Notes: generated by a model from the sequence alone, not told the origin. A DNA stretch of 64,000 nucleotides from Haliotis cracherodii (GCF_022045235.1 NW_027266341.1:37076001-37140000), one strand, 5' to 3'; positions 3,980-63,920 are shown, counted from the first letter of the stretch. Translations and numbers: made by a program.

Positions 3980-6900
3980 TTAAGGGGAGGTACCTTCTGT
4001 TGGAGTGACCTTTAGTTCATCATTTGCAGTAGTAGGCATGTTTGTACCTGGATAGAAAAAGACTGTTCATGTAATGTTGCTTGAACGTCACAGGCTTAAT
4101 GTACGAAGTGTTCGGCAAGCCAATGCCATTACGAATGTCTATTCGATTACTGTGCAGAGGTCGCTGTCAAACATTTTGCTTGTACCATTTTAATGTGCAA
4201 AATTTGCTTATAAAAACTATAAATATATTACTAACATTATCCGCACAATCAAATTTTCGGGATCACCCTGTCGTCTGCTGGTTCATACATTACTATTAAT
4301 CAAAGTCTCTCAGATCCTGATACGGCAAAGGGAAGTAATTCTACTGTGACATCTGTGAATTTGTAATAATAGGAAGTGAAACGAATGCGAGTCTCTTCAC
4401 TGGTTGTATTTAAAGAACAAATTGAAACCGAACCCCTCGGCCCGATGTATAAATTGTTATCTTTATAAATAGCCTGAAACGTGCAGAGTGTACCTTTGTG
4501 AGGTGGAGTTTGATCTGCTTCATCGTTTACAACAATGGTTGGTTTTGTATCTGGATCTACAATGAAACAAAGAATGTTATTCTCATTTTAACCTGGAGAC
4601 AATCAGTGTGAATGTTGTTTGAGAAGCTTTACGATCACAGACAGTTTGCTTCGACAATAGATTTGGAAATAGATAGAATTGCCAAATTGCGTGGAAGGGA
4701 TTTAAACTGGCTCACCATACTCCTTGGTAACCGGTGAATATACCCCTTGGTGACACGTGAGTATACCCCTTGGTGACCGGTGAATATACTCCTTGGTAAC
4801 TGGGGAGTATACCCCTTGGTGACCGGTGAGTATACCCCTTGGTGACCAGTGAATGGCCTTAACAATGCAGGTTCATGGTTTACAGAAGCTGCTGACATCA
4901 AGGGCGTGGAATAGTTGCATACTGCAGGTATTGTCGTATAAAGCAGTTGGTTACAACTTGGTAGAACACCTTTTGCCTGTTTTATGTTGTAGAACATATG
5001 TAGAGAATCTCACCCATGTGCCTTTTGATATCAAATATATCTACACAAGACGATAAAACTCTCGGAGTCTTAAACCTTCATCGACGAGTGTTGATATACA
5101 TGCTATCAAAAGATCCAAGGGTGAGATTCTAGGTATCATCCAACATCATTCCTCCAACTTTATCAGTTAGCAGACAATAAAAAGCACTCTCTTAAGTGTA
5201 AAAAGTACTGCTAACAGCTTCAGTAGGAGAGCCATTAGTGATGTCATTTGATTGTGACGTTATGGTTACCAATGACGTAACAATGGTCTGCAAAGCATTC
5301 TGATGCAATTTCATTGCGGCGACATCTTTAATGTAGATATCGCTTGATCGATACCTCCTGTGGCAGCCAGTTTTTGAGGCAGCCAGTTTTTCATTATATA
5401 TATATTCTTGGCCTTTGTCGGTATGGGGGCGGGAGTGTTATGGTGTCATACATGAAAGGCCATCTGACTTAATTATTGTGAATGGACATTTCACTGGCCA
5501 GTGATGTGTTGACGAAATCTTGCCTCTGTAGTTTCATTCTCTAGAATTATGGGCAGAAATGTTGAACTTATAAGATGACATTTTCTTAACACGTCCCGTG
5601 TAGAGCATCTGTGGGATGGCTTCGGGTGGCGAATGTACGCCAGAGACCCAGCACCCGCCAACGTGGCCCACCTGGGGGGAGTGTTTCATGTGTCATGGCG
5701 TGCAATACCAAGCAACCACACGTCAACGTGGCCCACCTGCGGGGAGTGTTTCATGTGTCATGGTGTGCAATACCAAGCAACCACACGTCAACGTGGCCCA
5801 CCTGCGGGGAGTGTTTCATGTGTCATGGCGAGCAATACCAAGCAACCATACGCCAAACATACTGCACCGGTCAACATGGCCCACCTGCAGGGGGGAGTGT
5901 TTCATGTGCATAGCGTGCAATACCAAGCAACCACACGCCAAACATACCGCACTCGCCAGATATTGATCTAAACGCCCGACACTTATCGCCATTACACCTA
6001 CACTATCAATTTATCAGTTCCCTTATTTTTTGTCTGTAGTATATATAGCAATTAGTATGGATAGTAAGTGTATCGTATCCGATTTTCTTTGAAAATTGTG
6101 ATTAAGTTTTAAAGAAATGTCATCATAAACACTAAAAACACTGAAATCGGAATTGCCTTGCGAGCATTAACACAGCAGGCAAGCTCCCACTGGTGACTTG
6201 TGCTGCAGTTGGAGTGGTTCATCAATTCTTTGAGAGAAAGGAGCCAAACATTTTTGATTTACCCACACCACATACTTTTTCAAACGTCCAGGACAACCTC
6301 ACCCACACTCCCCAACATCAAATTGTCTGTTAGTCTATTTTGTATATGTACCTGTAGATTTGTCATCCTCTTTGTCGATGATCCCAACTCGACCTCGAGC
6401 TCCCTTTGGTTTCCAGAAGATGACATAGCCCATTAGGATAATTGTTGCAATTATACAGCCCAGGGCAATGAGGCCAACCACCGTCGGCATTACCACATCC
6501 CTTACTATGCGTTCATTGCTGAAAGAAAACAACCTTGTGTTATCCCTTGCATGTAATAATGTCAAAATATATCCTTTAGGATGAACACAAAATATGTGTT
6601 CCTGAGGAAATATGTCTTCGGGATGGTGACAGTGTGCGAAATGCAAAGAGGATAATATGTACAGCATGTTCAGTAAGAAGGTGCCTGAATGAGCTACTTT
6701 GTATCATGTTTTGGACATGACATAGAAGGAAACCATGCCTATACTAATTGCAGTTCAGAAAGATGCCACACTTGTCTAATAAATAGCAACATAGTTCCGT
6801 CTCTTCTACAAGTTAACCGCAGTGATAATGCTGGATTATTGTTAAACTTGGTGTAAAACTCACTCACATATGTATGACAGATTGCAGACTATACCCATCG

Positions 6901-9900
6901 TTTCTACAACGAGACTCTGCCTTGACATAACGGGTGACCTACTGACATTCCATTGAACACCATTTACAAATGGTTCCTGACTGAGATGAGTAAGCTGCTT
7001 GTACTCCATTGTCATACAACATGGGAATCCCACAGGCCAGTTGAAAGACGCAAGTAAGTAGTGCTGTGTGTCGAGGGTATATGTACTGGCTGATCCGAGC
7101 TTTATTTCCCACATCGTGGATTCTACTGCAACGATCTTCAGTTTATGTATTGACTGTATTTAAGATGGTTGGGTGTTGCGAATGTCAGTCACGATTATGA
7201 CTGTGAGATATTTAAGCTTACACACTGTTTCGGCTATAGTCAGTTTCTATCTGATGCAATATGCGTCTCAGCTATGTAGCTATGGTGGCTTTATCTGACT
7301 ACCGCAATAGGAAGTAAACACTTGATTTTGTTTTCTCATTCGGTAAACATTATGATTTTGTTTATAACTGTCGTTGTTTCTGTAATACGGTTATGTGAGG
7401 TTAATTATTTGTTCTCTTTGACAAAATCACATGTTATCTTACCTCGTGTAAGCTAGCTCACCTCACTATTATGCATGAGAAGTTCAACTAGGAAGTACTA
7501 CACTTACTTATCGCACCAGAGCTGCTATATATTCGAAAAACAATTCGATTTTCGTTTTCGTGCAATCAGCTTATCAAATGTTTATTACATATACAAATGC
7601 TCGTCACGAGTGAAGGTCTAGCAGCAAAGACATTTCGGCCCAAAATAAATTCAGTGCATTTAGTTTATAGGGCACAGTTTATAGTAATGGTTTCTAGTTT
7701 TCAACGATTTGTCTACTTGACCTAATTGTAAGGCAGTGTTCGGTGGATAAGCTAGACTGGTTACTCGTATATAGCGATGTGTGTGCATGTGTGTGTGACT
7801 ACTTGTACTTGTCCGGACTAAAGTCCGATTTTAGTGCTAGCTCACTGAGGCAGTTATACATGAATACCCCACTCAGACACAGTATACTGACTCCGAGCCG
7901 ATAAGTCCTTTGTTTACCCTTAGTGCCAAGTGCAAGGCAGGGTAACAACAAGTACCATCTTTCAATGTATTTTCGCGTGGCGCTCTAGATATACTTTGAC
8001 CTAATGTCAGAGTAATGATTACAGACAAGTCAAACATGCATTTTCTTTTCATAATCCTTTACATTTTCAAAGTATACAATAGTATACTCCACCTTGTCGT
8101 AACAACAAGTTTTAATAGCTATTTTAAAATCACTGCATCTAAATCGAAAAAGAACTACTTTCAAGCAAGTGTCTAGGGATGTCAGAACATTCTCTACATT
8201 CAGTTGTGTTTTATAGTGGTTCTTCACATTACCAACTTCTTCACAAAACAACTCATAGCCAAATCCATACTGGAAAAGCATATTTACATTTCAGTTGCCC
8301 ATGTTGTACACCAACTACCATTAAATATTAGTACAATGTGACGTTGGCGTGGTAATCTGTTATCTGGAAGCTGAATAACACTACACCAATATTTGATGTC
8401 ATGTAAATGAGTTGCAATGGGAACCTCTCACATTCACCCAGGACCATGCCATTAATTACGATGTTATCAGTGGTGTTCTGCCAATTCCTAAGAAAGATTC
8501 ACAAATGCTTTTCTGTACATATTCAATAAATTTACAATGAGGGGCTTCCATAGCAAAGAATTGACGTTAGCAATGAATTAGATATGTTAAAGTAGGCAGA
8601 TACACTGATTTTGCGTTGAAAACAATATGCGGACACAACTGCCGTTCTGGCTTGTGAAGTTAAACAAGTTTTAGCGCTGGTCCATACAAGTTTGGATATA
8701 AACACTAGTCTCAAGTAGAATGAGACAATTTAAATAGGTTCACCCTTACAACAACATTTCTCTCCAACAGTACATATGTACAGTCGTCCACATTACTGAA
8801 GTCCGTGCCAGCTGAACAAGGCGTAGATGAGGGACGTGATCTCACCTGCCACAGCAGTATTCATGGGAGGTTTCCCCGCTTTTGCTCCCGCAGCATATGG
8901 TGTCGTCAGGATAGGCGTCATCCTCAAAAGTGCAATTTATTCTTTTTTCACCGAGCCCGATACAAACCTTCGCATCATGTGCTGCAAAAGAATAAACATC
9001 ATTGACAGTTCATTTCTGGTAAACATCACCATGGTACAAAATACAGCTTTCCCTCAGTATACTATCGCGCTCCCTCGCAATACTACCGACGCTCCATGGG
9101 GATCAGACATGGACTCTTCCCAAAGTTTGTGGCCGTTACTTGCAAGTCCGCGATAAGTATTATTAACTAATATCAAATGTTCTCTGTTGTGATATTGTTG
9201 GTAATTCTTTTCTTTCTAATTAAGGATTGACTGTGTATTTTTTCGGTTCATTGAGGTATGAATCGAAATACCGATGTGCAAACTATTGTAAGAATCCGAT
9301 ACGCGGAATTAGTGAGTGAGTTGGGTTTAACGCCGCTTTTAACATTATTACAGTTATATTACGGCATGTAAGCTTAATGTGGGAGGAAAGCCCGAAGTGA
9401 TGCAGGTCTCAGACGTTTACCACTTCGGTGAAACCCACGAGCATGGGTATGGTGCTGGAAAACCTAGAAACATAATCGGGGCGGGATTCGGGACTCGACC
9501 CCACAATCATAGGTTTCTGGCGTGCCCAAGGGACGCAACTCTGCACAGCCAATCGCCGCGCCTTAGACCACTGGACCACCCGTGCTCCCTACGCGGAATC
9601 AGACAAATATGACGAGATTGATAAACATTCCAGGCGTAGGAGAAGAACTGCATCTATTACGAATCCGAACAAATACGCCAGGGAGAATTAAAGGAGGCTG
9701 TTTCAAATGAAATGGTCAGTAACCTCCAGATTCAAGCATTAGTTTCCTGAAAACTGGTAAACACAGTTTGAAAATTGCAAGTTAGAAATGAAATGCGAAG
9801 ACATGACATTGATTTGTAGAACTGAGATTGTGCAATGCCGGTGTTCATGTTCGTGTGGTGTATTCAGCTATTTAGAACACAGGGGTCACAATGAACACAA

Positions 9901-10726
9901 CGAAAATTAAATTACTTAGATATGTTTCTGTACTTGGTGCAGGAAGAATTCTTCACGAAGCATTTGGCAAAGCAGCACCAAAGCTATAAGAAATAGCCGC
10001 CCATCAAATAGTTCCTGGTGGCTTTCCACAGCATTGTGAATAAGAGCCAATAAACTGATACCAATGGCCTTTCCAACTTCAGTATGCATGTTCTGGTTGA
10101 AGCTTTGTCACTGAGCTACTGATGAAGCCCTCATAAAAGGCCAAAAACTATTGTTTCTAAAAAAATGATTGACCACAACCATATTACCACATTCATATAT
10201 AATAAATTGTTGTTGCAACACATTTGACCCATTGTTTTGCCTTATATAGAAGACATTACTAGTCTCAGATGATATTTAAAAGTACATAATAAGTTTCGCG
10301 ATAAAACACGTTATATCCCTCCGCCGTACGCATTATCTGCCTGTTTTCTGTTCCCGCAGTAACTATTTATAATACCAGTTCCTAAAGGATTGTAATCAAT
10401 CAATAACATTGATAGATACCAGTACCTGGCTGAATAGTTATAATAGCTACATGGAGTGACACAGTGTGTACACTGTATTTTAGGTTCATACCTGCAAAAA
10501 CACAGAATTTTTAAAGTTGATTCTTAATTAACAACTGCAGCCCCTGTGTGTTTACACGAACTGAGTTCTGACAGTGACGAAAGCACCACACAGAGGCTAG
10601 AATTTGTACTACGGTTACGTCCATTTCATTTCTGATTCTCTTTGACATATGACACAAACAAATAGGTATATACTCACAAACAACAGCCAGTGCAAGAATA
10701 ATACACACAGTCGTTCGGGACAGCAT
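3980..10726 (-). CDS. Shisa-like/CYYR1-like single-pass membrane protein, paralog E (divergent; ~160 aa; 5 coding exons)
   Basis: Exons 10726-10678 (49 nt, MLSRTTVCIILALAVV signal peptide, GTGAGT donor), 8981-8846 (HDAKVCIGLGEKRINCTFEDDAYPDDTICCGSKSGETSHEYCCG), 6518-6352 (NERIVRDVVMPTVVGLIALGCIIATIILMGYVIFWKPKGARGRVG..., TM), 4556-4494 (DPDTKPTIVVNDEADQTPPHK) and 4047-3980 (GTNMPTTANDELKVTPTEGTSP*). All junctions are GT-AG with matching phases 1,2,1,1. The 3' exons are less certain. Confidence 0.78.
4715..4855. repeat. Minisatellite, ~21-bp unit (TACCCCTTGGTGACCGGTGAG-like)
   Basis: About 6 tandem imperfect copies. Confidence 0.85.
5001..5390 (+). mobile_element. Non-autonomous element with an internal palindrome; second copy at ~39391-39648 (-)
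   Basis: Inverted arms AGAATCTCACCC..TTTTGATA / TATCAAAA..GGGTGAGATTCT (5001-5131). The ~200-bp body (CTCTTAAGTGTAAAAAGTACTGCTAACAGCTTCAGTAG...) is reverse-complemented near 39400-39580. Confidence 0.7.
5655..5950. repeat. Tandem repeat, 65-bp unit, ~4 copies
   Basis: CAACGTGGCCCACCTG recurs at 5659, 5724 and 5789, with a variant copy at ~5872. Confidence 0.9.
7765..7985 (-). mobile_element. SINE family 4, partial
   Basis: Reverse complement of the body seen at 56254-56604 (GTCCGGACTA..., CTCAGACACAGTATACTGACTCCGAGCCGA). Confidence 0.75.
9310..9589 (-). mobile_element. tRNA-derived SINE, family 2
   Basis: Reverse complement of the 2750-3035 element; TSD TACGCGGAAT at 9300-9309 and 9590-9599. 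Confidence 0.9.
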
Positions 10727-16045: not shown

Positions 16046-16056
16046 AATGATTTATT

Positions 16057-18186: not shown

Positions 18187-21100
18187 CTACCACTGTAGGC
18201 TTGAATACACGTGCTCGTCAGTGTCGTTTGTTCGCATGGCTTGGGTATGTTCAGAATTGTTACCCATTGTAGGAGCAACAGATGTAGCCGGAGGGGCTGC
18301 TCTACTCGGTGGGGGATAGGCGGCTTGTCCTGCCATTGGTGGATTTGCTTGTCTCGCCATTGGTTGATTTCCTTGTCTTGCAATTGGTGGATTTGCGGCT
18401 TGCCCTACCATTGGTGGATGGACGGCTTGTCCTGCCATTGGTGGATGGAAAGGTTGTCCTGCCATTGGAGAATAGGCTTGTACTGGTCCTGGTCCTATCT
18501 GAGGAGAGTAGGGTGGTGGAGGTTCCGCCATCCCAATAGGTGGAGGGTGAGGTGTTCCAGGAGGAGGCTGAACCGTGTGCACATATCCTGCATTATATGC
18601 AGCAGTGGGTGGGTTCCCGGCTGGATAGAACAAGCATTATGTTCGTATAGTATAAAGATGGGGGTTCTGAGGCTGTGTATTTAAGAGGACCAACGACTGT
18701 TAAGTTGTTTGTCATACATCTGACTTTAGGACTTTTCATATATAATGAGAACAAAATACAATGGACATTGATCTACAGTAATTACACTTTACAGAGTTAG
18801 TTGTCAAAGCATCATATGTGCCACAACTTTGAATCCCTTATTTGTGTTTGTTGTTTAATGCTGCTCGCCGCAATATTCCAATTATATGAGTATGTTTAGT
18901 ACCTGCAGATATGACGGTAAGTTGTTGGCTGGTGGTCACTACCTGACCCCGGTGACCTCGGGATGACCTACAGCAGCAGACACAGCACACGACTATTCCT
19001 GCAATCGCGGCGATCAAGACGCCGACACCAACCACGACCCCGATTATCAGTCCCGTCGTTGAAGGATTCCCGCCGTCAGAGCTGTTATTGAGGTTAGAGA
19101 GAACACAATGTTATGTAAAGAAGCGATCTGGTATACCTACATAGTGACTACTGATTTTACACATATTGACTTATGACTGATTTTCACACGTATCTTCGAC
19201 AAAGGTCATTCCAATCTATTTTCTGTTAATTCTATTCATTACTGTTAATCAACGCTAACATACACCCTATTTACATTTCGCACAATGCATCAAACTGTAT
19301 TTTACATCACTATGTGTGATAGAAATATATAAATTCTTCTCAATTTCTTCGGAAATTAACATTTATATTATGTAGAAACATTTATATATAATGCACCTCT
19401 GTGGGGCCAAATGGAATTGCAATAATATAACGTTACGTAAAAGTTAAACTAATATTATTACTGCCCTCGAATTGTTCATATTAACGACAATCAGCTTTAT
19501 CATATTTTTATTATTTTTTATTTTTTATTATATCATACTTTATTACTATCACTTAAATTAGCGGATAAAACCATGTTGCGAATTCCAAAAGAAAGCTGAA
19601 GGATAATGAAAACAAATATTTTTTTAACCATATGCATATATTTCAATAATTATAAAATTAGTTATAAAATATTTATCAATATTGTTAAAAATTCCAGAAA
19701 GATCACAGTCTAATGAATAATGATCACGATGTGTAAATATTGATAAGGCAGACTCTTACAGACGTGTATTTTTTTTAATACAACAATTAAAAAAATATTG
19801 TATATTCCTCAAACAAATGTTAACGTAATTATAAACTTTGTTACATCTCATACGTATACAGAATGTTATTTTCGAATGTTAATCAGAAGAAACGTACAAT
19901 ATCTTTGGCCCAGTTCAGATGTAACGATTGAAGCTGACAGACACATAAGTACACCTAGACGTTTGAGATTATGTTCCCATTGTTCCTTAAGTGAGTGACG
20001 AGTGAGTATGGTTCTACCCCGCTTTTAACAATATGCCAGCAATATCACAGGGTAGGACACCGGAAATGGGTTTCACACATTGTTCCCATGTGGGGAATCG
20101 GCGTGACGAGCGAACGCTTTAACCACTAGGCTACCCCACCGCCCCCATTGTTCTTTGAACGAGGTTGAAGATGAATAACCATTTTATAAGTATGTTGCAA
20201 ATAAAATCAATTTTCGAAAATATTATATTGAACGACAATATCATGTACATCCCAATGGAAATAAACACACTTTATGTCATGTTCCTAAGGCAAGATAATT
20301 CGTACCCTTTAAATGTTTAGAATATCATGCTGTGTCAGTTCGAAATCATCCCTGTAAACTCGACAAACGCTTCTGTATTCTTTAAATTATGCACCTTTGC
20401 ATCTACAGTATTACAGAAAAAAAACCTTATATCTACCATACCTTATGCTATCTTCATTTACATCACAAAGTATTAGGTCATACTACTAGCTGGTCGAAAA
20501 TGACAAACTTATCAACCAAATATTGGAATGGTGCACCAGGTTTTTATAAATTAGTCTTTTTTTAAAATGTGTAATGCCAAAAGTCATCTGGAAGCTGACT
20601 GTGATATTGTTATGATATTAAACAAACAAATGGTTGCATTTTGCTGTTCAGAAAATAATAAATTATTTGTTACTGTTTCCTCTTTTGAGTCTGTAACGAT
20701 TGGTCGCAATACACACACCGTGGATACTTGTGAAATCCTTATTAATATGATCAAGTCAGAAACTTTTGTTATTCTATTAGTCTACTTGTAACAGTTGACT
20801 ATATACAGTGAAAGCAAGAAAATAGAGTGATGCATATGTACATACTCACCAGCAATATCGGGAAGAGCTTATTCCACAGCATGAGTCAGTACATGTTAAT
20901 GTCCTGGTTTTAAAACTGCTGTACTCGTAACATATTTCATAGGCAGACACTGGAAAAAAACAGACCCAGGAAGTAGTTAGATAAACTGTAAAGATATGCA
21001 TGTGTAAGGGTGAATGTTATCCTGCCCTATTTTTTATCCCGGGAATGCAATTCTCTAGTGTCAGGATGATTCTCCCCAGTGAATATGAAGCTATACCAGT

Positions 21101-24245: not shown

Positions 24246-25791
24246 CAAAAGCGTGGCTATGTTAGTGCAGTAATCTAACCCGTGACTGGGAATACATACT
24301 TAACTCCATACTGCCGCTTATTTCATGTATCTGAACTTGTCGTTAACATAACCCACTCTCTTACCCAGAGTTCCTTGCGGCCAGCATAGTACCACTGCAA
24401 CAGGGCGGCGACATGTGACGATTCGTCAAATCTTACTCAGTCCATTCAAGATGGTGCACATGTTTTTCATCTGTTTCATTTTTGACGAGTCTACATATTT
24501 ACATAAACGTATGTCACAGAATGGATGACTTTCATTGAGAAAACTTCCTAAAACGTGAAAAACTAATCCATTTGCGTGTTTATATTTTTGCGCTGTCATC
24601 GAAGCCCTACGACGAGCTAGAGATACGGCCACTGTAAGGATTCATCCACGTCCTGCTACACAAGTCACTGTCGTAGTTGTAGCAGCGTATCCATATAATA
24701 ATGCAAAGGAATGTGAAGCGCACCGAAAGGCTTGCATTGGGCCCCTCTTTTCCGATTTCAGAATAAGCGCGTAAGCTTACAAACAAGAAAAAAGTCCGGT
24801 CACGTGATATGTAAATTAGCTTGTGGCAGTGGTGTTAATGCCAAGTCATTGCTGCCCCGGTTGTGTAACATTACTATTTCAAAGGCTGATACACTTCGCA
24901 TGTTCAAATTGCCAGGCGACTGGGGCGTGACGACGTGTACTTTACATCCTGTCTCACCTCGCCGACTCATACGCCATGAATACTGTACATTCCTGATAAC
25001 ATCTGACTGAACGCGTCGAGCCATAACTGCGACACAGAGAGATATGCGATGAATGAGTGAGTGAGTTTGATTTAACGCCGCTTTGGACAGTATTTCAGTT
25101 AAATTACAGCATGTCAACTTAACGTGGAGGAAGATGCCGAGTGATGTAGGGTTAATAGGTCTTGTGAAAGCACAAATATGGTACTGTTAAACCATTCCTG
25201 GGTTCTGGGATTCGAACAATGGCATGACAAAGGGACACAACTCTGACATCCGTGTCACCAGGTGAAGGAAGTGTCTCAACTCTTGAATTGCGAAGTCAAT
25301 ATTCATCTTTAATTAATGCCAAATACATTTATGGACTAGACACAGAAGCATTTAGAAGCCGTGGGGAACATGTAATTTATTTTCACATTAACGACGTTTA
25401 TCGTGTATCATATTAAGCTAATTTTCTTGCGTATCTTTTGAGATCGACCAGGCTGAAGTTATTGTCACAAATGAACCTGTGACGAGCTAAGATTCTTTAT
25501 CGGGTCATTTGCGGGTAACTAAATCTGACATAGATATTTGATGTTGATTCAGGTTTTTTGTCACCGTTCCCAAACTGATCACGAGGACACTATAACACGG
25601 AGCTGTTTAGATCATGTACGTTCACTGATAGTATCTAGGTCAGAGGTGATCTGTTCTAACGGCACAGTGTCATGTCACTCTGTGTAGATGTAGACGTTAC
25701 ACTTATAATGACCAGTGGTCTACAAATGATGTGAATACTTACCAATAGAAGCTACACAGAGAAGAGTCCACCCAGTTTTCAGAGAAATCAT
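18187..25791 (-). CDS. Shisa-like/CYYR1-like single-pass membrane protein, paralog A (253 aa; 4 coding exons)
   Basis: Exons 25791-25743 (49 nt, MISLKTGWTLLCVASI), 20949-20850 (SAYEICYEYSSFKTRTLTCTDSCCGISSSRYC/C), 19081-18903 (TM GLIIGVVVGVGVLIAAIAGIVV then CCVCCCRSSRGHRGQVV) and 18620-18187 (Pro-rich tail with PPPPY, ending DEHVYSSLQW*). GT-AG sites, phases 1-2-1, 762 nt uninterrupted. Confidence 0.9.
19990..20146 (-). mobile_element. tRNA-derived SINE, family 1
   Basis: Head GGGGCGGTGGGGTAGCCTAGTGGTTAAAGCGTTCGCTCGTCACGCC on -; TSD CCCATTGTTC. Confidence 0.88.
21261..21434. mobile_element. Tc1/mariner-pogo-type MITE
   Basis: TIRs CAGTAAACTACGG/TTTATAACGAAC...CGTAGTTTACTG flanked by a TA TSD. 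Confidence 0.85.
22830..22975 (-). mobile_element. SINE family 3, partial
   Basis: GTCTGGACCAGACAATCCAGTG..GATACGATGACATGC..GCATGGG matches the 46325-46587 copy. Confidence 0.7.
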
Positions 25792-41600: not shown

Positions 41601-44298
41601 GGATACATGTCGTTCTTCAATCTTTCATAATGTATCAAATAGTCTCAAATAAGTAGTATTTTGTTACTTGCGTGACTAGGAACCTCTTCATGTTTGAATA
41701 AAACTTTCTTTGGCAACCTTTTTCATATCATAAACTTATTTCTTTGGGTTTCCTTTATAATTCGACGTTGACGTTGGCGGTTTATGTGGTATGTGATCAA
41801 GTAACAAGGCGCGTCAAATACTACAGATATATAATCAGTGATATCTTTTAATTACTGTAACAATGCATGTCGGTTTAAATTAGTGCTGTCATAATGATTG
41901 CAGGTTTGGATAAATACTTTCCCCATTGGTGATTCCGGGTCAGAATAGATACTAAGTGTACCACGCTTGTCGAAAGAGCTGACTAAAGACCATCGGCTGG
42001 TAAGGCTCGGCGACCTGGTTAACTAGCGTGTCATCATAACCCAACCGCTTTGGACGACAATCATATGGGCAGCCATCCGGATGTCTGGTCAAAACTCCAT
42101 TATATAAAGGCCGCTGTCATGTAGCTGGAATAGTGCTGCTAGGGGCTTTGAAAACGAACCTCGCTAAATATAATATATACCTGTTGATTTAACATCTTCT
42201 TGGCTGTTTGTGGATACTGGTTGACCCTGTCTTCGTGATTTACGACGACGGTAGAGGCAATATAATATGACACCCACCACCACAGCAATCAGAACTAAAA
42301 TCCCCACCACGAGTCCAACAATAAGTCCAGTATTTGCTGTGCTGAAATGTAAACCAAGACGTTGTCAATGACATGTTTGCAGCTATTATTTCACAGGTAC
42401 ACTTCATTGTACTTCCTATTCCGTTTCAATGTCAGTCTTTAAGCTCCAACATATGAATTGTTATATAATTACCAGACAATTTCTGAAAGGATGCTCGAGT
42501 TATGTTGTACTGTCATCAAGGATACAATGCTCGATAGGGTAAACAATCCAAAGTGAGTGAGTATGGTTTTACGCCGCTTACCAAAAATGGGTTCACACTT
42601 TATATGTGGGGAATCGAACGCGAGCCTGCGGCGTGGCGATCACACGCTTTAACCACTCGGTCTTCCCGCCTACCCACAAGCCGGAGAACCGAGTTCGATT
42701 CCTATCTTGGATACAATATGTGAAGCCGGTTGCTTGTGTCATCCCGCCGTAATATGGATGAACTATTGTAAAAGGCGGTGTAACCTCTACTGCCAAACAC
42801 ACTCATCAAGATGTTTCAGATCTCGAGACTTCGAGACTTACATATTTACTTGTGTTTGACTTCAGAAACACACAATGTCTCAACCCACATTTAACTGTTA
42901 TTTGTGATATCCTGATTTATCTATTTCTGTCACAGAGTCCAATAGTATCAATTGTATTGAATCTCCAATTTGTGATGATAAATACTAGTACCCTGTACAC
43001 ATTCGCTACCACAGCCTCGATATAAGCTCATTTCGAGTGTGACGAGTCTAAAACGTCCAGTTAAATTACTCTCACGAGCGAGGGGGATTCTGTACCACTA
43101 ATGAGATAGGAGAGTTTGAGATCGTCACGTCACTTCCGAAACATACTAATGGTGATAGATTTATTATAAAAAAATGTCATAATAAAATGGAGATATAAAA
43201 GAAAGCTGTTACATAGGTCTCTGACTTTCTGGTATGAATATACCTGTAAGCGTTGTCATTGACGGTCTGTGTATAACGATGACGATACAGTGATAATTTC
43301 ATAATATTTGTTAATTATTGCAATATGGATGTGTAACAACGAGTCCGCACTCAAAGAAATGTCTTTCTGACACACTCTTCAATAACGAATGTCCGATCCA
43401 TTTGTCTTTTGGCAGTCACCTACGTGTACATGTATAATATCCTACACAGTGTGATCAAACATAACAGGTCCTGTGACATAATGATATGACATGACATAAT
43501 GAATGAGTTGTAGTTTATGACGCTTTGAGTGGTATTTCCGTGGTATCACGGCGCGCCAGCTTGGTGTTAATGGAAGGTCCTAGACGATTACCATTTCGTA
43601 GAATCTCATGAGCATAAGTATGGTGCTGACAATCCAGAATTGGTCTTAACTAGGCGAGCCTTATTCAAACCAACGAACATGAACCACATGATCATGACAC
43701 GTCTAAGGGACGCAACTCTGCACAGACTAGGTCACCGGTTAGTGTCGCCTGACACACCGAGCTGAGCATGATACGCATAATTTTAGAACGGTGCTTCACC
43801 AATGAAATACCACAAAAACACAAATGTGTACCCACCCTGGCTCGCTGCAGCAGTATGTAGATGACAAACCACAACAGTTGAATTCACAGTATTTCTTTCT
43901 GTAAGTCCCATCAGAATTTTTCACGTAACACACTTCTTGCGCTTTGGCTTTGGCTTTGGAGGAAACGAATCTGATGATTAATAGCATGCTTTAATTTTTA
44001 ATATTGAAAAATCAACAGAAAATGTGACAGAGAACAGTAGCATACCCTCACTGCTTGTGAGGTTAAGTAAATGATTATCATAAAGTAATATAGACTTACT
44101 ATTTCAAGCAACGAAAACAGGTTACACAATCACTCCCGTAAACACTGAAGCAATGAACGTTTACGCATGAATGATTCGTGTTATCAAGATCAAAATCAAC
44201 AGTCGTGTCCTGATCGGACACATTAACGTGAACATATAGATGTACTCACAGATAGCGAATATAGGAACAATAATACATCCACCCTTCAATGAAGTCAT
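38670..44298 (-). CDS. Shisa-like/CYYR1-like single-pass membrane protein, paralog C (~170 aa; 4 coding exons)
   Basis: Exons 44298-44250 (49 nt, MTSLKGGCIIVPIFAI; an in-frame upstream ATG at 44316 is possible), ~43953-43836 (KAKAQEVCYVKNSDGTYRKKYCEFNCCGLSSTYCCSEP), 42341-42181 (TM GLIVGLVVGILVLIAVVVGVILY then CLYRRRKSRR) and 38854-38670 (SADAPYSDKDYPAEPPPDPYYLPP...ATVTDI*). Phases 1-2-1. Confidence 0.85.
39025..39225 (-). mobile_element. SINE family 2, 5'-truncated
   Basis: Matches the family-2 body (GGGATTCGAACCCACAATCATAGGTTTCTGG). Confidence 0.82.
40490..40635 (-). mobile_element. SINE family 1
   Basis: TTTTACGCC..TATTCCAGCAATATCACGGCGGGGGACACC..GGGAATCGA.CCCG. Confidence 0.82.
40968..41243 (+). 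mobile_element. SINE family 3 (full length)
   Basis: GACCCGTGAAGA..GGGGTAGAATAGGTCTTCAGCAACCCATGCTTG... with an (AAACC)n tail; TSD TCTTATTCA. Confidence 0.88.
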
Positions 44299-49569: not shown

Positions 49570-50032
49570 TTGGGTTGTAAGGATTCCCTGGTCGTGTAAG
49601 GATTCCTTGGTCGTGTAAGGATTCCCTGGTCATGTAAGGATTCCCTGGTCATGTAAGAATACTCTGGTAGTGTAAGAAAACTGTTCGTGTCTGGATTCCG
49701 TGGTCGTGTACGGATTCCATGGTGGTGTTAGGATTCCCTGGTCGTGTAAGAATACTCTGCTCATGTAAGGATTCCCTGGTTGTGTTAGGATTCCCTGGTC
49801 CTGTAAGAATACTCTGCTCATGTAAGGATTCCCTGGTCATGTAAGGATTCCTTGATCGTGTAAGAATACGCTGGTCGTGTAAGAATACTTTGCTCATGTA
49901 AGAATTCCCTGGTCATGTAAGGATTCCTTGGTCGTGTAAGAATACGCTGGTGGTGTAAGAATACTTTGCTCATGTAAGAATTCCCTGGTCATGTAAGAAT
50001 TCCCTGGTCATGTAAGGATTCCCTGGTCGTGT
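49570..50032. repeat. Minisatellite, ~19-bp unit (TGTAAGGATTCCCTGGTCG/A)
   Basis: About 24 imperfect tandem copies. Confidence 0.9.
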
Positions 50033-52467: not shown

Positions 52468-55400
52468 ATGTACTTTCTGAAACGTGGATGGATACTTCTC
52501 ACTCTGACTGCTTTTTGTGAGTATATACATGCTATATGAGTTTTTGGCCATCGGGGAGAACTTACTGCGTTGGAAAACCACTAATATCACTGACACCACC
52601 CAACCATCCCACCATCCAACCACCCCACCACCTCAAAACCCAACCACACCACACATGCCCTATATATTGATGCATTTTGAAATACATTACTGAAACCTTA
52701 ATGTTGAAACAACGTGTCCTGGGATTTTTTCGGGTAATATTGTAGTTTTACAAGCTTCTATGGTTGTAGTAAGTGTACGTGTACCCCAAACGCGGCTCAT
52801 ACACGATAAGGTAGTGTGAGTGATCAGTTGGGTTTAACGCCGCTTGTGGCGTTGTTTCTGTTATAGCACGACGTTTCAGCGTGATGTGGGAGGAACGCCC
52901 GAAGTGATGCGGGTTTTAGACGTTTCACAATTTGGTACAACCCACGAATACGACTATGTTGCGAACAAACCTGGAAACATGATTGGGAATTCGAACTCAC
53001 AATCTGTGTTTCCCCCAACAACTAAGGGACACAACTCTGTACAGTTAATTCCGGCGCCATATGCGACTGGGTCACCCGTGCCCCCATTTAGAGTCTTGAT
53101 GTGTGTTTACGAGCGTAATGACACCGATGGTCTTGTTTTAAAACTGTTTTAGTGTCACGATGAATTATATTTCAAGCGATGATAGAAATCCTTGGTTAAT
53201 GTACACTACATGATATCTGCACGTAGGGCATTTAGACACTGTTAAGTATGTCTGCTGACATGTATTTACGTTCACTGCGCATCTCGAATGTCGTGTGTTA
53301 GGCTATCGACAAAATGTACGTCGCAGGGGAGAATAATGGAATATAAGTCAAATCGTCCAACAAATAAATTGAACTGATTTATTTTACAACAGGTCACGTA
53401 TTCTGTACGGCAAACGTGAATGGGAGTAGCGCCGATACGTGCTTACACTATGACGTCACTGCGACATATATAAATCTCGTTTCGTAACGTCATGGCACTG
53501 TATGACACCACCAATGCAACGTCGCTGCACGTAAGAAATTGTAGGAAATACGTAACTATGCACGTTTGTATCCATTTGCTACAAAATAAGCACACTAACA
53601 TAAAGAAAAATGTTTTTTATAGCTGAACATTTGATCCATAACATATTTGAAAAAATAGTGGAGTTAATTTAAACATATGCTATTAATTATACTTTGATGT
53701 TAAACTGAAAAGCCGGTGAGTGGTTTCCCTACGAGTCTCTATAGGAAAGTTTGAGTGTGGCAGCAGTAGTTACACTTTGCGCCGAGCACAACAAATGAGT
53801 CGCCTTCATATTTCAATTGGAAACTTAGATTAAATCGCCGTGATTTGAAAACTTCTCCTCTCAGAAACAATTAACTACTCTGAATTCAGACAAGCGGACA
53901 TTCGTGATAATGATAACGTGAACCCATAACAGGAACATATTCACACATGCACGCATTTTTCGAAATAATTGTCATTTAAATTGAGTCACATTCCCTGACG
54001 TGGGATGTATACACGGAGATGAATTGCGCAATTGATTTTCGCTCACTTTAACAGCGGAAACTCCGATATGAAACGTCAATGAAATATCTAAATTCATATT
54101 TAAACGAGTGCATTGTACATGTATTGTACATTATTTATGGTACCAAATATAAGCATTTGCTTTAACCGGATGCTGTTATAGCTTATGATCCAACGTATGA
54201 CAATAGCATACTCTGTCAATGACCTGTGTCACTTGGTGCTATCACACCCTGATATAACTGAAATACTGTTTGAAGCGGCATGGCACAATATAGAGTGTCT
54301 ACCCTGTTTGACCAACACTGTTCAACATTCGACCACCTTCTTGCCTTAGTGGATAGAGTGTCTACCCGGTGAGAAGAAGGTCGGAGGTTCGATCCCCAGC
54401 CGCGTCAGACGCAAAGACGTTAAAAGATGGTACTTGTTGTTACCCTTCCTGGCGCTCTACATTAAGGGACTAAAACATGGACTGATTGGCTTGGATTCAG
54501 TATACTGTGTCCGGGCGGGGTATTCGTGTTAAACTCCGACATTGTATCTCAGTGTGCTAGCACTATGAAATCGGCATTAGTCCGGACTAGTACAAGCAGC
54601 CACACACACATACACATGCTTGCACGTCGCTTATATAAGTGCAATAATCTTGAATGCGACGTTAAACCCCATGTCACCTCTTCTGTTCTACATTGCTTTA
54701 ACAAAATGTGCGAGGTTTCTTAATTCAGAAGGATTATCAGTACTTGATCATTCATCAAGTTCGATTACTTTTGATTTATTTTGTCTACGAAGATTATCAA
54801 AATATGGACACGGTACTATAAAAACGGTATTTATCGGTAACGGTAAATCATTCTTATTAAAATGATTACAAGTTCTGTCTTCGGGTCAATTTTTTCCCAT
54901 CACCCCTTCTCTATTGCTTATGTGTGGTTAGTGGAGTTTTTCTCAATGATACGAATACTAAGAGATGGCAAATAACATTTTAATTTTCTTTTATGTCAAA
55001 TAATCTATCAAATAAAACCTGTCGAAAAGTATTTACTGAACCTGTCCATCTGACATACGTCGACAGAATATAAGTTTTGACATTCAATTTTTCAGCCTAT
55101 GCCTTTGACGTGTGTACCGAGTATGGGGATTTTCATACCAAGACACTGACGTGTCGCGATTTATGCTGTGGGTCACGTTCTTTCAAATATTGTTGGTAAG
55201 TATAAAAAAAAATACTGGCGAAAGGCTTTGACAATGTCCGTGTGCGGGGAGGCAATATATCGCAATAAAAGGCGACTTAATTGGATCGGATGGTCAGACT
55301 CAGTGATGATAATGACTCTGATAATCGAGACTGAATATCCTCTGGCGTTATATTCATCATACTATCAATCACTGGTTTGTCTGGCCCAGCTTTGGTATAG

Positions 55401-56950
55401 CTGTACTAATTCGTGTTTCTTCTAGCTCAACTAGACGTCTGTCAGCAAAGAGTATTGGGGTGGTCGTGACTTGTGTTGTATTCGTGATCGCCTTAATTGT
55501 CGGAGCACTCTACTGCTGTAGGCTATATCAAGGCCCCCGGGGGCGCGTCGTGACCACCAACCAACAACTAGCCGTCGTACAGACAGGTACTACACATACT
55601 CCATCAATAAGTCGTACTTGTGTTGATGAAATGACACATAACAGCTACAGTCGTTATCTTTATTTGACGAAACAAATGGATACTTCCTATCTGGTTTCAT
55701 CACTGATTTCCAGTGGTCCATTCATATACTATTCACAGCCATTTTGCCCTTTACACCAAATGGAACCTGTTTCGGCGGATAATCAAGACTGGTTATTCTC
55801 TTACATTGACCATGTATATTTGCATGGTGTGAAGGTGTTGATTCACAACGTATGTTGTGCTTTTTTCGTTGTGGTTTTCTTTCTGAAAGTCTCTGAGAAA
55901 GTCTTTTACTTCTGACATGATCAAACACATAAGTGAGTGAGCGAGTGAGTGAGTATGGTTTTACGCTGCAATATTCCAGCAATATCACGGCGGGGGACAC
56001 TAAAAATGGGCTTCACACATTGTACCCATCTGGGGAATCGAACCCGGGTGTTCGGCGCGACGAGCGACGGCTTTAACCACTAGGCTACCCCACCGCCCTC
56101 AAACACATAAATAATATTGGCAAGAGGGCGATTTTTCTTTAACTTCGAGAGAAATTCTAAGTACTTGTTCTTGTACTTGTACAGGGGGTAGTATTAAAAC
56201 ATGACATGCTTCTTATCATTACGAATTTGGCTGCGCTGTTGTCTTACTATATACCACCTCCGTGGTCTATTGGTGGAGGGTCCGCCCGGAGAGCGGAAGG
56301 TCCGGGGTTCGATCCCCGACCGCGTCAGACCAAAAGACGTTAAAAGATGGTACTTGTTGTTACCCTGTCTAGCGGTCGGCATTAAGGGGCTAAAACAAGG
56401 ACTGGTCGGCTCGGAGTCAGTATACTGTGTCTGAGTGGGATATTCATGTTAAACTGCGGCATGGTATCTCAGTGAGCTAGCACTATAAATCGACATCAGT
56501 CCGGACTAGTACAAACAGCCACACATACATACATGTGCATGCACGGTCGCTATATAAGTGCAATAATCTTGGACGCGATGTTAAACCCCATTTCACCTCA
56601 CCTGTTTTAGTATATGCCTTTAAGGCTGATGCAGAATAACTGACTGCCGTTGCCAATGTGAAGTAATACCCTTACTAGCCTCGCTATAATCAGACTCAAA
56701 TGTATCCTTTATCCTTTATCCAGGTACAAACCCCACCGGTGCTGCATATAATGCAGGATACATCTACCCACCTCAGCCTGCTCCAGGTACGTACTGCCCC
56801 CAACCTGCAGGGACGGAACAACCCCCACCACCCTACTTCCACAGACCAGGGCCAGTCTATGCTCCAACAACAGGAGAAGCATTTTCTCCTTTTACACTCT
56901 CTGAAACCAACTCTGAAACCAAAGCCTTGACAACCAGTGGGCAGGTTTAA
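52468..56950 (+). CDS. Shisa-like/CYYR1-like single-pass membrane protein, paralog D (178 aa; 4 coding exons; inverted relative to the cluster)
   Basis: Exons 52468-52516 (49 nt, MYFLKRGWILLTLTAF, GTGAGT donor), 55096-55195 (YAFDVCTEYGDFHTKTLTCRDLCCGSRSFKYC/C), 55426-55586 (TM then YCCRLYQGPRGRVVTTNQQ) and 56724-56950 (GTNPTGAAYNAGYIYPPQPAPGTYCPQPAGTEQPPPPYF...SGQV*). Phases 1-2-1. Confidence 0.88.
52815..53085 (-). mobile_element. SINE family 2, diverged
   Basis: GTTGGGTTTAACGCCGC...GACTGGGTCACCCGTGCCCCC. Confidence 0.75.
54332..54682 (+). mobile_element. tRNA-derived SINE, family 4
   Basis: A box (GCCTTAGTGG), B box (GGTTCGATCCCC) and a body shared with 56254-56604. Confidence 0.85.
55933..56098 (-). 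mobile_element. SINE family 1 in intron 3 of paralog D
   Basis: Full length; TSD TCAAACACATAA. Confidence 0.9.
56254..56604 (+). mobile_element. tRNA-derived SINE, family 4
   Basis: CCACCTCCGTGGTCTATTGG..GGTTCGATCCCC..GTTAAACCCCATTTCACCTCACCT. Confidence 0.88.
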
Positions 56951-59911: not shown

Positions 59912-60074
59912 AGTGAGTGAGTGAGTGTGTGAATGAGTATGGTTTTATTCCAGCAATATCACGGCGGGGGACACCGGAAATGAGCTTCACACATTGTACC
60001 CATGTCGGGAATCGAACCCGGGTCTTTGGCGTGACGAGCGAATGCTTTAACCACTAGGCTACCCGACCGCCCCC
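59912..60074 (-). mobile_element. SINE family 1
   Basis: TSD CAGCGCATACGA. Confidence 0.85.
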
Positions 60075-63459: not shown

Positions 63460-63639
63460 CATCTGGAATAATTCTCAGTAGTCATGCATAGTGTCTCCTG
63501 AGCATAAAGATAAAATTGCAGATTTAATACGTATACGTAATTAATACATATATCAAACTGTAAGAGAGTATACGTATGTCTCATAGTACTCACTTCATTT
63601 AGTTTTAAATCATTATTATCTTCGTTTCCATACCCCCAA

Positions 63640-63920
63640 TTATGCTGAAGGTGTGTATGTGTGCTCGTCTGGAGGGGGAGCCGAAGATTTGGAATCAGGT
63701 GGTCCATTTTGTAAGGGAGAGGCCGTTGCTGCCGTTGGGGAATATGGTGGCAGAGGCATTGGTGGATATTGTGGCCCCGCCATCGGGGGACTGGGTTGTC
63801 CCGCCATGACGGTGGAATACGATGGGGGTGGCTGTGCCATTGCTGTTGATTGGGGGTAGTAGATTGGAGGTTGAGCTGGGTAGTTGTAGCCTTGGTTGAC
63901 AGTTGTTGTGTTTACTGTGC
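63640..63920 (-). CDS. Last coding exon of a sixth Shisa-like/CYYR1-like paralog F (upstream exons lie beyond the window)
   Basis: Acceptor TTTCTCCCACTCAG ending at 63921, phase 1. Reads TVNTTTVNQGYNYPAQPPIYYPQSTAMAQPPPSYSTVMAGQPSPPMAGPQYPPMPLPPYSP...PPPDEHTYTPSA*, clearly homologous to the tails of A and B. Confidence 0.85.

What the first reader, a model, noticed from the sequence alone, without database searches (positions are those of the whole stretch)
3980..63920. Hidden tandem cluster of at least 6 diversified Shisa-like (STMC6/CYYR1-like) membrane protein genes
Seen: the ORF track misses these genes. Manual splicing gives five complete genes plus one terminal exon, with the same layout in each: a 49-nt signal-peptide exon, a ~100-136-nt six-cysteine exon, a TM exon and a Pro/Thr-rich tail exon, joined by phase 1-2-1 introns. 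Established: the C-C-CC-CC ectodomain + single TM + PPxY tail defines the Shisa-like group (CYYR1, WBP1, VOPP1, TMEM92), whose members act as membrane adaptors and are usually few and dispersed in vertebrates. Inference: this is a lineage-specific expanded array, continuing past the right edge, that may act as a diversified receptor or adaptor repertoire (for example immune or recognition functions, or targeting different membrane proteins for ubiquitination).
Basis: partly seen in the sequence, partly recalled or inferred. Interest (0 to 1): 0.88.

Follow-up and report, generated by a model that had tools for sequence, protein, structure and literature searches.

The report
Abalone tandem array of CYYR1-like genes
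The window holds five complete genes and the last exon of a sixth, all for small single-pass membrane proteins of the CYYR1/Shisa-like kind; they belong to an abalone-specific array of at least 11 genes, public annotation already names their neighbours and orthologues this way, and their function is untested.

Summary
Five complete four-exon genes and one terminal exon lie at the stated places. All 16 introns are GT-AG with phases 1-2-1.

- **Layout:** each gene has a 49-nt signal-peptide exon, a 100-136-nt exon with the C-C-CC-CC pattern, a transmembrane exon and a proline-rich tail exon.
- **Species:** the genome is Haliotis cracherodii (black abalone).
- **Model check:** the same model-building rules reproduce the RefSeq protein of the gene just left of the window exactly (202/202). 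Gene g3 is 89% identical and collinear with H. rufescens 'shisa-5-like'.
- **Gap:** the assembly gap lies inside intron 1 of g3 and interrupts no exon.
- **Array size:** the array runs past both window edges, with at least 11 genes over about 167 kb. A second array with at least 9 transmembrane exons lies 11.6 Mb away.
- **Family:** the closest family is CYYR1 in the Shisa-like (STMC6) superfamily. Some orthologues pass Pfam's CYYR1 threshold and others fall just below it.
- **Phylogeny:** in a tree, all array genes form a Haliotis-only group. Most have one-to-one orthologues in other abalone species, so the expansion is lineage-specific but old.

The most likely function is as membrane adaptors that recruit NEDD4-family ubiquitin ligases through PPxY motifs. 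This is inferred, not shown. Verdict: real, ordinary in kind, modestly interesting as a family expansion.

The parts
10678..10726 (-). g1 exon 1: 49-nt signal-peptide exon
   Evidence: ATG, hydrophobic 16 aa, GTGAGT donor, phase 1
8846..8981 (-). g1 exon 2: 136-nt six-Cys exon with divergent spacing C-9-C-12-CC-11-CC
   Evidence: AG/GT, phases 1 to 2
6352..6518 (-). g1 exon 3: transmembrane exon, 167 nt
   Evidence: Hydropathy 2.66 over 21 aa; AG/GT; phases 2 to 1
3980..4047 (-). g1 exon 4: short 22-aa tail with an early stop and no PPxY
   Evidence: Acceptor context almost identical to g5 and g2. The stop comes early relative to the paralogues.
25743..25791 (-). g2 exon 1: signal peptide
20850..20949 (-). 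g2 exon 2: six-Cys exon, 100 nt. The sixth Cys codon is split by the intron.
   Evidence: Pfam Shisa_N 13.1 bits
18903..19081 (-). g2 exon 3: transmembrane segment plus juxtamembrane CCVCCC
   Evidence: Pfam CYYR1 24.3 bits, profile positions 55-100
18187..18620 (-). g2 exon 4: 143-aa Pro-rich tail with PPPY and a C-terminal YSSL
31996..32044 (-). g3 exon 1: signal peptide, on the far side of the assembly gap
   Evidence: 15/16 residues identical to the N-terminus of orthologue P0001
31413..31552 (.). Assembly gap (N x 140) inside intron 1 of g3
   Evidence: touches no exon
30156..30276 (-). g3 exon 2: six-Cys exon, 121 nt
   Evidence: Shisa_N 18.4 bits
29559..29725 (-). g3 exon 3: transmembrane segment plus CCVCCC
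   Evidence: 91-92% identical to P0001
28546..28799 (-). g3 exon 4: Pro-rich tail with PPAY and a C-terminal YTAL
44250..44298 (-). g4 exon 1: signal peptide
43836..43953 (-). g4 exon 2: six-Cys exon, 118 nt. An alternative phase-1 acceptor lies 12 nt downstream.
42181..42341 (-). g4 exon 3: transmembrane exon with a basic juxtamembrane stretch
38670..38854 (-). g4 exon 4: tail without a canonical PPxY. This is the least certain exon; a second in-phase acceptor lies 6 nt downstream.
52468..52516 (+). g5 exon 1: signal peptide
55096..55195 (+). g5 exon 2: six-Cys exon, 100 nt
55426..55586 (+). g5 exon 3: transmembrane exon
56724..56950 (+). g5 exon 4: Pro-rich tail with PPPY
63640..63920 (-). 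g6 exon 4: tail with PPIY, PPSY and LPPY. Exons 3, 2 and 1 lie beyond the edge at window-equivalent 65378-65523, 66694-66805 and 69263-69311.

Best explanation
**What it is.** This is part of a tandem array of genuine four-exon genes in the black abalone, Haliotis cracherodii.

**What each gene encodes.** Each product is a small type-I membrane protein of about 140-250 aa, made of:
- a cleavable signal peptide;
- a roughly 35-aa ectodomain held by six cysteines in the pattern C-x(12-14)-C-x3-CC-x(6-7)-CC. This holds for g2 to g6; g1 has the divergent spacing C-9-C-12-CC-11-CC;
- one transmembrane helix rich in small residues;
- a cysteine cluster at the cytoplasmic membrane face in most copies, a likely palmitoylation site;
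- a conserved basic/Thr-rich juxtamembrane motif;
- a disordered proline-rich tail, usually with one to three PPxY/LPxY motifs and in some copies an acidic YxxL/I end.

**Family.** The genes are CYYR1-like members of the Shisa-like (STMC6) superfamily.

**History.** The family grew by tandem duplication in the abalone lineage, before the sampled Haliotis species diverged. There are now at least 11 genes at this locus and a second array on the same chromosome.

**Likely mechanism (inferred from human CYYR1 and WBP1L, not shown here).** The tail's PPxY motifs bind the WW domains of NEDD4-family HECT ubiquitin ligases at endosomal or plasma membranes. This would regulate the ligases or deliver membrane cargo to them. 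The variable ectodomain and transmembrane region would set partner or compartment specificity. Copies without PPxY (g1, g4) would be decaying genes, or regulators that do not recruit a ligase.
For: **Gene structure.** All splice sites are canonical and the phases are conserved.

**Model validation.**
- g0 = RefSeq P0156 at 202/202; gL2 = P0040 at 158/159.
- g3 vs P0001: 89% identical with no indel at any junction.
- g6 vs P0158: 71% identical, both 195 aa.

**Species and public names.** XP_0710... proteins of H. cracherodii sit on a contig of 61,937,186 bp, which is the length of C78.

**Family.**
- CYYR1 (Pfam threshold 31 bits): P0003 48.9, P0012 35.7, P0005 (g2 orthologue) 32.7. Below threshold: P0156 26.1, and the g2 exon 3 alone 24.3.
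- Shisa_N: 13-22.6 bits. WBP-1: 25.9 bits.
- Of 97 homologues, 31 match CYYR1, 12 match Shisa_N and 3 match WBP-1 at E <= 0.001.
- The nearest ESM Atlas clusters are mollusc CYYR1 and shisa-4-like, then chordate shisa-5.

**Architecture and fold.**
- Cys pattern, transmembrane segment and motifs are tabulated.
- An AlphaFold model of P0001 shows four short strands at residues 21-50 (pLDDT about 87), a helix at 60-96 and a disordered tail.

**Expansion.** More genes lie on both sides of the window, and there is a second array.

**Tree.**
- The array genes form a Haliotis-only group.
- Orthologue pairs have 99-100% bootstrap support.

**Selection.** Paralogue dN/dS is 0.28-0.60 over exons 1-3.

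**Mechanism precedent.** Human CYYR1 binds WWP1, WWP2 and ITCH through its PPxY motifs and is placed in the STMC6 family (PMC11399591).
Against: - No transcript evidence was obtained for the window genes.
- No protein identical to g1-g6 turned up in the protein collections. I cannot say whether RefSeq annotates them in this species.
- The g3 orthologue scores only 14.3 bits for CYYR1. Exon-level scores are all below Pfam thresholds.
- g1 and g4 lack PPxY. g1 has an early stop in the tail and a long branch. g5 vs g0 has dN/dS 0.60.
- Support for one clade of all 25 array-type sequences is mixed: ultrafast bootstrap 32, SH-aLRT 99. A core of 23 has 90/88.
- The ligase-adaptor mechanism rests entirely on analogy with vertebrate proteins.
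Confidence: 0.72

Rival explanations
1. The array is a mix of working genes and decaying copies. In the window, g1 (truncated tail, divergent Cys spacing), g4 (no PPxY, uncertain tail exon) and g5 (inverted copy of g0 that has lost the CCVCCC cluster) would be unexpressed or on the way to becoming pseudogenes.
For: - g1 has an early stop and a branch length of 1.46.
- No orthologue was found for g1, g4 or g5 among the database hits.
- g0-g5 dN/dS is 0.60.
- The second array holds Cys exons with in-frame stops.
Against: - All three keep intact reading frames, the six cysteines and canonical splice sites in the conserved phases.
- The library is clustered at 50% identity, so orthologues can hide behind a representative.
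Confidence: 0.25
2. The proteins work like Shisa proper rather than like CYYR1. The Cys-rich ectodomain and transmembrane segment would bind other membrane proteins (receptors or ion channels) and control their maturation, trafficking or gating. PPxY would be secondary.
For: - Sub-threshold to borderline Shisa_N matches: 13-22.6 bits.
- The transmembrane/juxtamembrane exon is the most conserved part: g2-g3 exon 3 dN 0.17 against 0.40 in exon 2.
- The Shisa Pfam term is over-represented among gill-enriched genes of a mussel (PMC5549309).
Against: - CYYR1 scores are higher than Shisa_N scores in most members.
- The ectodomain is only about 35 aa.
- No partner is known.
Confidence: 0.15
3. The array is a diversified recognition or immune-signalling receptor repertoire. 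Variable ectodomains would bind ligands and the acidic YxxL/I ends would signal through SH2 proteins.
For: - Ectodomain loops and tails diverge faster than the transmembrane exon.
- C-terminal YSSL, YTAL and YETI follow acidic residues in g2, g3 and g7.
- The family has expanded in this lineage.
Against: - dN/dS is below 1 everywhere measured.
- Paralogues are stable one-to-one orthologues across species, not rapidly turning over.
- The ectodomain is tiny.
- There are no expression or challenge data.
- Yxx-hydrophobic motifs are also ordinary sorting signals.
Confidence: 0.08
4. The apparent genes are chance ORF fragments or an assembly artefact.
For: None beyond the assembly gap in one intron.
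Against: - Exon-to-exon E-values are 1e-8 to 1e-24.
- The neighbouring gene's model matches RefSeq exactly.
- Annotated orthologues exist in three other species.
Confidence: 0.01

Closest known systems
[quoted passage not shown]
   Same: - Same order of parts: signal peptide, short Cys-rich ectodomain ending in CC-x-CC, a single transmembrane segment whose end is Cys-rich, a basic/Thr-rich juxtamembrane stretch, then a tail with PPxY motifs.
- Several array members or their orthologues pass Pfam's threshold: 32.7-48.9 bits against 31.
- RefSeq names array genes 'CYYR1-like'.
   Different: - From memory, CYYR1 is a single gene in vertebrates. Here there are at least 20 loci in two tandem arrays.
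- Most copies carry one PPxY rather than three, and two carry none.
- Some copies score well below threshold (P0001 14.3 bits).
- Many have a CCVCCC or (CCG)n cluster and an acidic YxxL/I end.
Shisa4/Shisa5 (Scotin) and the Shisa N-terminal domain (PF13908)
   Same: - C-C-CC-CC core, single transmembrane segment and a Pro-rich PPxY tail.
- RefSeq names orthologues 'shisa-4-like' and 'shisa-5-like'.
- A chordate shisa-5 cluster is among the nearest in the ESM Atlas.
   Different: - Shisa_N scores are mostly below the threshold of 22 bits. The range is 13-20.7, and only P0008 reaches 22.6.
- The ectodomain is shorter than in Shisa proper.
WBP1 / WBP1L (OPAL1) / VOPP1 (PF11669 and relatives)
   Same: - Same superfamily, with PPxY tails that recruit NEDD4-family ligases. 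WBP1L acts as an adaptor for CXCR4 ubiquitination, as cited in PMC11399591.
- The g6 orthologue P0158 scores 25.9 bits for WBP-1.
   Different: - Below the WBP-1 threshold of 28.1 bits.
- Only the g6 branch shows this affinity.

Membership tests
Shisa-like / STMC6 superfamily (as I recall Pei & Grishin 2012; the paper is not held) | N-terminal signal peptide | tested here: met
   - 16-aa exon 1 with a basic residue followed by a hydrophobic run in g1-g6.
- The model of P0001 has a helix at residues 2-17.
- No dedicated signal-peptide predictor was available.
Shisa-like / STMC6 superfamily | Six conserved cysteines, C-C-CC-CC, in a short ectodomain | tested here: met
   All nine local genes show it. 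Eight have C-x(12-24)-C-x3-CC-x(6-7)-CC; g1 has C-9-C-12-CC-11-CC.
Shisa-like / STMC6 superfamily | Single transmembrane helix directly after the Cys domain | tested here: met
   Mean hydropathy 2.0-3.4 over 21 aa in every gene. Helix at 60-96 with pLDDT 80-90 in the model.
Shisa-like / STMC6 superfamily | Pro-rich cytoplasmic tail with PPxY motifs | tested here: inconclusive
   Present in g2, g3, g5 and g6, and in g0, g7 and gL2 outside the window. Absent in g1 and g4.
CYYR1 (PF10873) | Whole-protein score at or above Pfam's gathering threshold (31 bits) | tested here: inconclusive
   - Joined window models were not searched, by rule.
- Exon 3 alone: g2 24.3, g3 18.3 bits.
- Orthologues and array neighbours that pass: P0003 48.9, P0012 35.7, P0005 32.7.
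- Those that fail: P0156 26.1, P0007 25.5, P0006 24.2, P0008 22.9, P0001 14.3.
Shisa proper (PF13908 Shisa_N) | Score at or above the gathering threshold (22 bits) | tested here: not met
   - Window Cys exons score 13.1, 18.4 and 13.8 bits; two give no hit.
- Orthologues score 14.7-20.7. Only P0008 (g7 orthologue) reaches 22.6.
WBP1/VOPP1 (PF11669 WBP-1) | Score at or above the gathering threshold (28.1 bits) | tested here: not met
   P0158 25.9 and P0014 18.6 bits.
CYYR1-type NEDD4-family ligase adaptor (function) | PPxY-dependent binding to WW domains of WWP1, WWP2 or ITCH | not testable with these tools
   Known for human CYYR1 only (PMC11399591). I did not run a complex prediction, because short linear motifs give that test little power.

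The most novel reading that the evidence does not exclude
Abalone turned a gene that is single-copy in vertebrates (CYYR1, copy number from my memory) into a stable set of 20 or more membrane adaptors. Each paralogue would pair a distinct mini-ectodomain and transmembrane segment with a different mix of PPxY, palmitoylation and acidic YxxL motifs. Different membrane cargoes or compartments would then be routed to NEDD4-family ligases, or to SH2 signalling, by different array members. That would be a combinatorial trafficking or immune-regulatory system not described in molluscs.
Probability: 0.15. Interest if true: 0.6.

Novelty: new member of a known kind. Interest (0 to 1): 0.35.

Why it matters
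STMC6/Shisa-like proteins are poorly understood adaptors for NEDD4-family ubiquitin ligases and membrane receptors. From memory, vertebrates have one CYYR1 gene.

A conserved set of 20 or more such genes in abalone offers natural variants of ectodomain, cysteine cluster and tail motifs. These could be used to work out which part sets partner specificity. It also marks a gene family to watch in abalone tissue and disease transcriptomics.

For annotation, the exon coordinates given here can be checked against gene models around an assembly gap. The find does not reveal a new kind of system.

Tried and rejected
- **Orthologue DNA.** I therefore had no DNA of the orthologues and could do no cross-species dN/dS or synteny.
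- **Joined models.** Exons were searched by reference, and database orthologues stood in for whole proteins.
- **PDB by sequence.** Only transmembrane-segment matches to MHC, APP and sodium-channel beta subunits, which are not homology.
- **Foldseek against PDB.** The model gave nothing at E <= 0.001.
- **Third protein search.** A search with the 97-row profile returned only 5 hits because of the word filter.
- **Alternative g1 last exon.** A PPPY-containing ORF at 5397-5468(-) was rejected: wrong phase and no polypyrimidine tract. The exon at 4047 shares its acceptor context with the paralogues.
- **Literature.** I found no paper on this family in Haliotis or in molluscs. Pei & Grishin 2012 is not held.
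- **Complex prediction.** No complex-prediction job was sent.

Full report
**1. Observation**

A six-frame scan for Cys-dense ORF pieces found five short segments with the pattern C...C...CC...CC, four on the minus strand and one on the plus strand. Using them and the neighbouring hydrophobic segments as tblastn queries against the window showed that they hit each other at E = 1e-6 to 1e-24.

Reading the DNA around each hit gave canonical AG acceptors and GT donors at homologous positions in every gene. The intron after the Cys exon always splits a codon after its second base. In g2 and g5 that codon is the sixth cysteine.

A scan of both strands for ATG + 49 nt + GT[AG]AG gave seven sites. 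Five of them encode a basic-then-hydrophobic 16-mer and sit upstream of a Cys exon on the correct strand.

The resulting models:

| Gene | Strand | Exon 1 | Exon 2 | Exon 3 | Exon 4 | Length |
|---|---|---|---|---|---|---|
| g1 | - | 10726-10678 | 8981-8846 | 6518-6352 | 4047-3980 | 139 aa |
| g2 | - | 25791-25743 | 20949-20850 | 19081-18903 | 18620-18187 | 253 aa |
| g3 | - | 32044-31996 | 30276-30156 | 29725-29559 | 28799-28546 | 196 aa |
| g4 | - | 44298-44250 | 43953-43836 | 42341-42181 | 38854-38670 | 170 aa |
| g5 | + | 52468-52516 | 55096-55195 | 55426-55586 | 56724-56950 | 178 aa |
| g6 | - | beyond the edge | beyond the edge | beyond the edge | 63920-63640 | 195 aa |

Exon sizes are 49 nt, 100-136 nt and 161-179 nt, and the intron phases are 1-2-1.

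**2. The assembly gap**

- The N run at 31413-31552 lies in intron 1 of g3. It is 444 nt from exon 1 and 1137 nt from exon 2. A 21-nt x 15.7 tandem repeat at 30966-31296 sits beside it and is a likely cause of the gap.
- No reading frame crosses the gap.
- No coding exon can be hidden in it. The g3 model (196 aa) is collinear with its H. rufescens orthologue P0001 (197 aa, 89% identity). The orthologue joins the same signal-peptide exon to the same Cys exon.

**3. Whose genome, and is the cluster 'hidden'?**

The window is G000:C78:37076001-37140000.

Protein searches with the g3 transmembrane ORF returned 'protein shisa-5-like [Haliotis rufescens]'. [quoted passage not shown] These sit on a contig of 61,937,186 bp, which is exactly the length of C78. 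Earlier notes of this scan had already called the genome black abalone, and this confirms it.

Fetching the flanks and applying the same splice rules gave:
- a gene g0 just left of the window whose translation equals RefSeq P0156 at 202/202 residues;
- a gene gL2 equal to P0040 at 158/159 residues.

These two matches serve as a control on my model building.

No protein identical to g1-g6 appeared in any search. I cannot tell whether RefSeq annotates them in this species.

**4. Extent of the family**

A six-frame profile search of the whole genome, followed by local searches of fetched stretches, shows the following.

- **This array:** at least 11 genes between C78:36.991 and 37.158 Mb. In order they are a gene at 36.991 Mb, the P0010 gene at 37.032-37.037 Mb, gL2, g0, g1 to g5, g6 (whose first three exons lie 1.5-5.4 kb beyond the right edge) and g7. 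Nothing was found in the next 10 kb to the right.
- **Second array:** at C78:48.697-48.844 Mb, with at least 9 transmembrane exons and about 13 Cys exons. Two of the Cys exons carry in-frame stops. RefSeq P0006 and P0012 map there.
- **Dispersed member:** at least one (P0087) lies on contig C5.

That makes at least 21 loci.

**5. What the proteins look like** (model of orthologue P0001)

- **Signal peptide:** present in all.
- **Ectodomain:** about 35 aa, with C-x(12-14)-C-x3-CC-x(6-7)-CC. g7 has a longer first loop. g1 has C-9-C-12-CC-11-CC. In the model this region forms four short strands with pLDDT about 87.
- **Transmembrane helix:** rich in Gly, Ala, Val and Ile.
- **Juxtamembrane cysteines:** CCVCCC in g0, g2 and g3, CICCC in g6, and (CCG)n in g7. 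These are candidate palmitoylation sites (inference).
- **Conserved motif:** a stretch of the type R-S-S-Q-G-H-R-G-Q-V-V-T-T-N-Q-Q-L-A-V.
- **Tail:** disordered, 9-21% proline.
- **PPxY/LPxY counts:** g2 1, g3 1, g5 1, g6 3, g0 1, g7 1, gL2 2, g1 0, g4 0.
- **C-terminal end:** g2, g3 and g7 end in an acidic stretch followed by YSSL, YTAL or YETI.
- **g1 tail:** it stops early relative to its paralogues, although its acceptor context is nearly identical to theirs.

**6. Family assignment**

By rule I searched exons separately.
- Cys exons of g2, g3 and g5 give Shisa_N at 13.1, 18.4 and 13.8 bits (threshold 22).
- Transmembrane exons of g2 and g3 give CYYR1 at 24.3 and 18.3 bits (threshold 31), aligned to profile positions 55-100.

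Whole natural proteins from the same array or their orthologues:

| Pfam family (threshold) | Scores in bits |
|---|---|
| CYYR1 (31) | P0003 48.9; P0012 35.7; P0005 (g2 orthologue) 32.7; P0156 (g0) 26.1; P0001 (g3 orthologue) 14.3 |
| Shisa_N (22) | P0008 (g7 orthologue) 22.6; P0040 (gL2) 20.7 |
| WBP-1 (28.1) | P0158 (g6 orthologue) 25.9 |

A profile search of 1.84 billion representatives found 184 relatives at E <= 0.001. Of the 97 that I scanned, 31 match CYYR1, 12 Shisa_N and 3 WBP-1. All 42 hits for which the sources give an organism are molluscs: Haliotis, Patella, Littorina, Mytilus, Mya, Dreissena, Mactra, Mercenaria, several scallops and Solemya. The nearest ESM Atlas clusters are mollusc CYYR1 and shisa-4-like, then chordate shisa-5, WBP1-like, VOPP1 and shisa-3.

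Conclusion: the genes are secure members of the Shisa-like/STMC6 superfamily. CYYR1 is the closest family. Individual copies straddle the curated thresholds.

**7. Local expansion or ancient paralogues?**

I built a maximum-likelihood tree of 70 sequences over 165 columns (quick version). Six long unlabelled rows were left out: P0027, P0036, P0032, P0051, P0043 and P0023.

- All 25 array-type abalone sequences fall on one side of a branch, with no sequence from another genus inside.
- Support is mixed: ultrafast bootstrap 32 and SH-aLRT 99 for all 25, and 90/88 for a core of 23.
- Two other abalone members (P0025, P0087) fall outside with bivalve, Patella and Littorina sequences.
- Inside the group, orthologue pairs are strongly supported: g3-P0001 100/99, g2-P0005 99/98, g6-P0009/P0158 100/97, g7-P0008 100/98, gL2-P0157 100/99, g0-P0002 99/90.
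- g5 is sister to the g0 pair (100/88).
- The second-array genes group with g3 (88/80).

The paralogues are one-to-one orthologues across Haliotis species, including H. asinina. All of them nevertheless trace to duplications within the abalone lineage, not to ancient bilaterian genes. Consecutive RefSeq accession numbers in H. rubra and H. asinina hint at conserved arrays there too. That is a weak inference.

**8. Constraint**

Nei-Gojobori estimates between paralogues over exons 1-3 give dN/dS of 0.28-0.60. That is below 1 but high for membrane proteins, and it rests on only about 100 codons.

The Cys exon and the tail change faster than the transmembrane exon. For g2-g3, dN is 0.40 in exon 2 against 0.17 in exon 3. 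Exon 3 also has an unusually low dS (0.28), which may reflect gene conversion or nucleotide-level constraint.

**9. Mechanism**

What is shown here is the architecture, the family and the expansion. The mechanism is inferred.

Human CYYR1 binds the WW domains of WWP1, WWP2 and ITCH through multiple PPxY motifs. It recruits WWP1 to late endosomes and drives its degradation. WBP1L, from the same family, is a ligase adaptor for CXCR4 (PMC11399591).

By analogy, the PPxY-bearing array members most likely recruit abalone NEDD4-family ligases to membranes. Ectodomain, transmembrane segment and acylation would set where this happens and with what partner.

Alternatives are Shisa-like control of other membrane proteins and an immune-receptor role. 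They are listed with their tests under rival explanations. The only expression hint from the literature is that the Shisa Pfam term is over-represented among gill-enriched genes of a mussel (PMC5549309).

**10. What could not be done**

- Whole-model searches of g1-g6: left out by rule.
- Structure comparison was uninformative.

**11. Verdict**

The thing itself is a lineage-specific tandem expansion of a known, already annotated family with unknown function. It is useful for annotation and a reasonable lead for abalone cell biology, but it is not a new kind of system.

Noticed in passing
window 26769-28054; 47136-48822; 49576-50032; 15132-15937: Large minisatellites lie between the genes: 63 nt x 20, 34 nt x 50, 19 nt x 24, and CA-rich 85/142-nt units. 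They produce the longest ORFs in the window (up to 491 aa), which are not genes.
   Followed up: partly
window about 62330-63540: Chance tblastn hits recur in pairs exactly 594 nt apart. This points to a direct repeat of about 0.6 kb just 3' of the g6 stop codon. Its period is too long for the tandem-repeat run.
   Followed up: no
window 18903-19081 vs 29559-29725 (exon 3 of g2 and g3): Synonymous divergence of the transmembrane exon is much lower (dS 0.28) than in the neighbouring Cys exon (saturated). This suggests gene conversion or nucleotide-level constraint. Exon 1 shows the same for g0-g5 and g3-g6.
   Followed up: no
G000:C78:48697000-48845000 (L006-L021): A second array of very similar copies lies on both strands. 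Two of its Cys exons, at 48751424-48751513 and 48797995-48798108, carry the same in-frame stop (..DGS*ETK..), so pseudogene copies have themselves been duplicated.
   Followed up: partly
window-equivalent 79673-79863 (L002, g7 exon 3): The juxtamembrane cysteine cluster of g7 is a codon repeat giving CCG CCG CCG CCG CCG. This is a microsatellite-like expansion of the putative acylation site.
   Followed up: no
window 18187-18230; 28546-28590; L002 g7 tail end: g2, g3 and g7 end with an acidic stretch followed by YxxL/I (YSSL, YTAL, YETI). g6 has YTPS at the same place. This could be a sorting signal or an SH2-type docking site.
   Followed up: no
window 38848-38854 and 43941-43953: g4 has tandem alternative acceptors in the same phase: 6 nt apart at exon 4 and 12 nt apart at exon 2. 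Only transcript data can decide between them.
   Followed up: no
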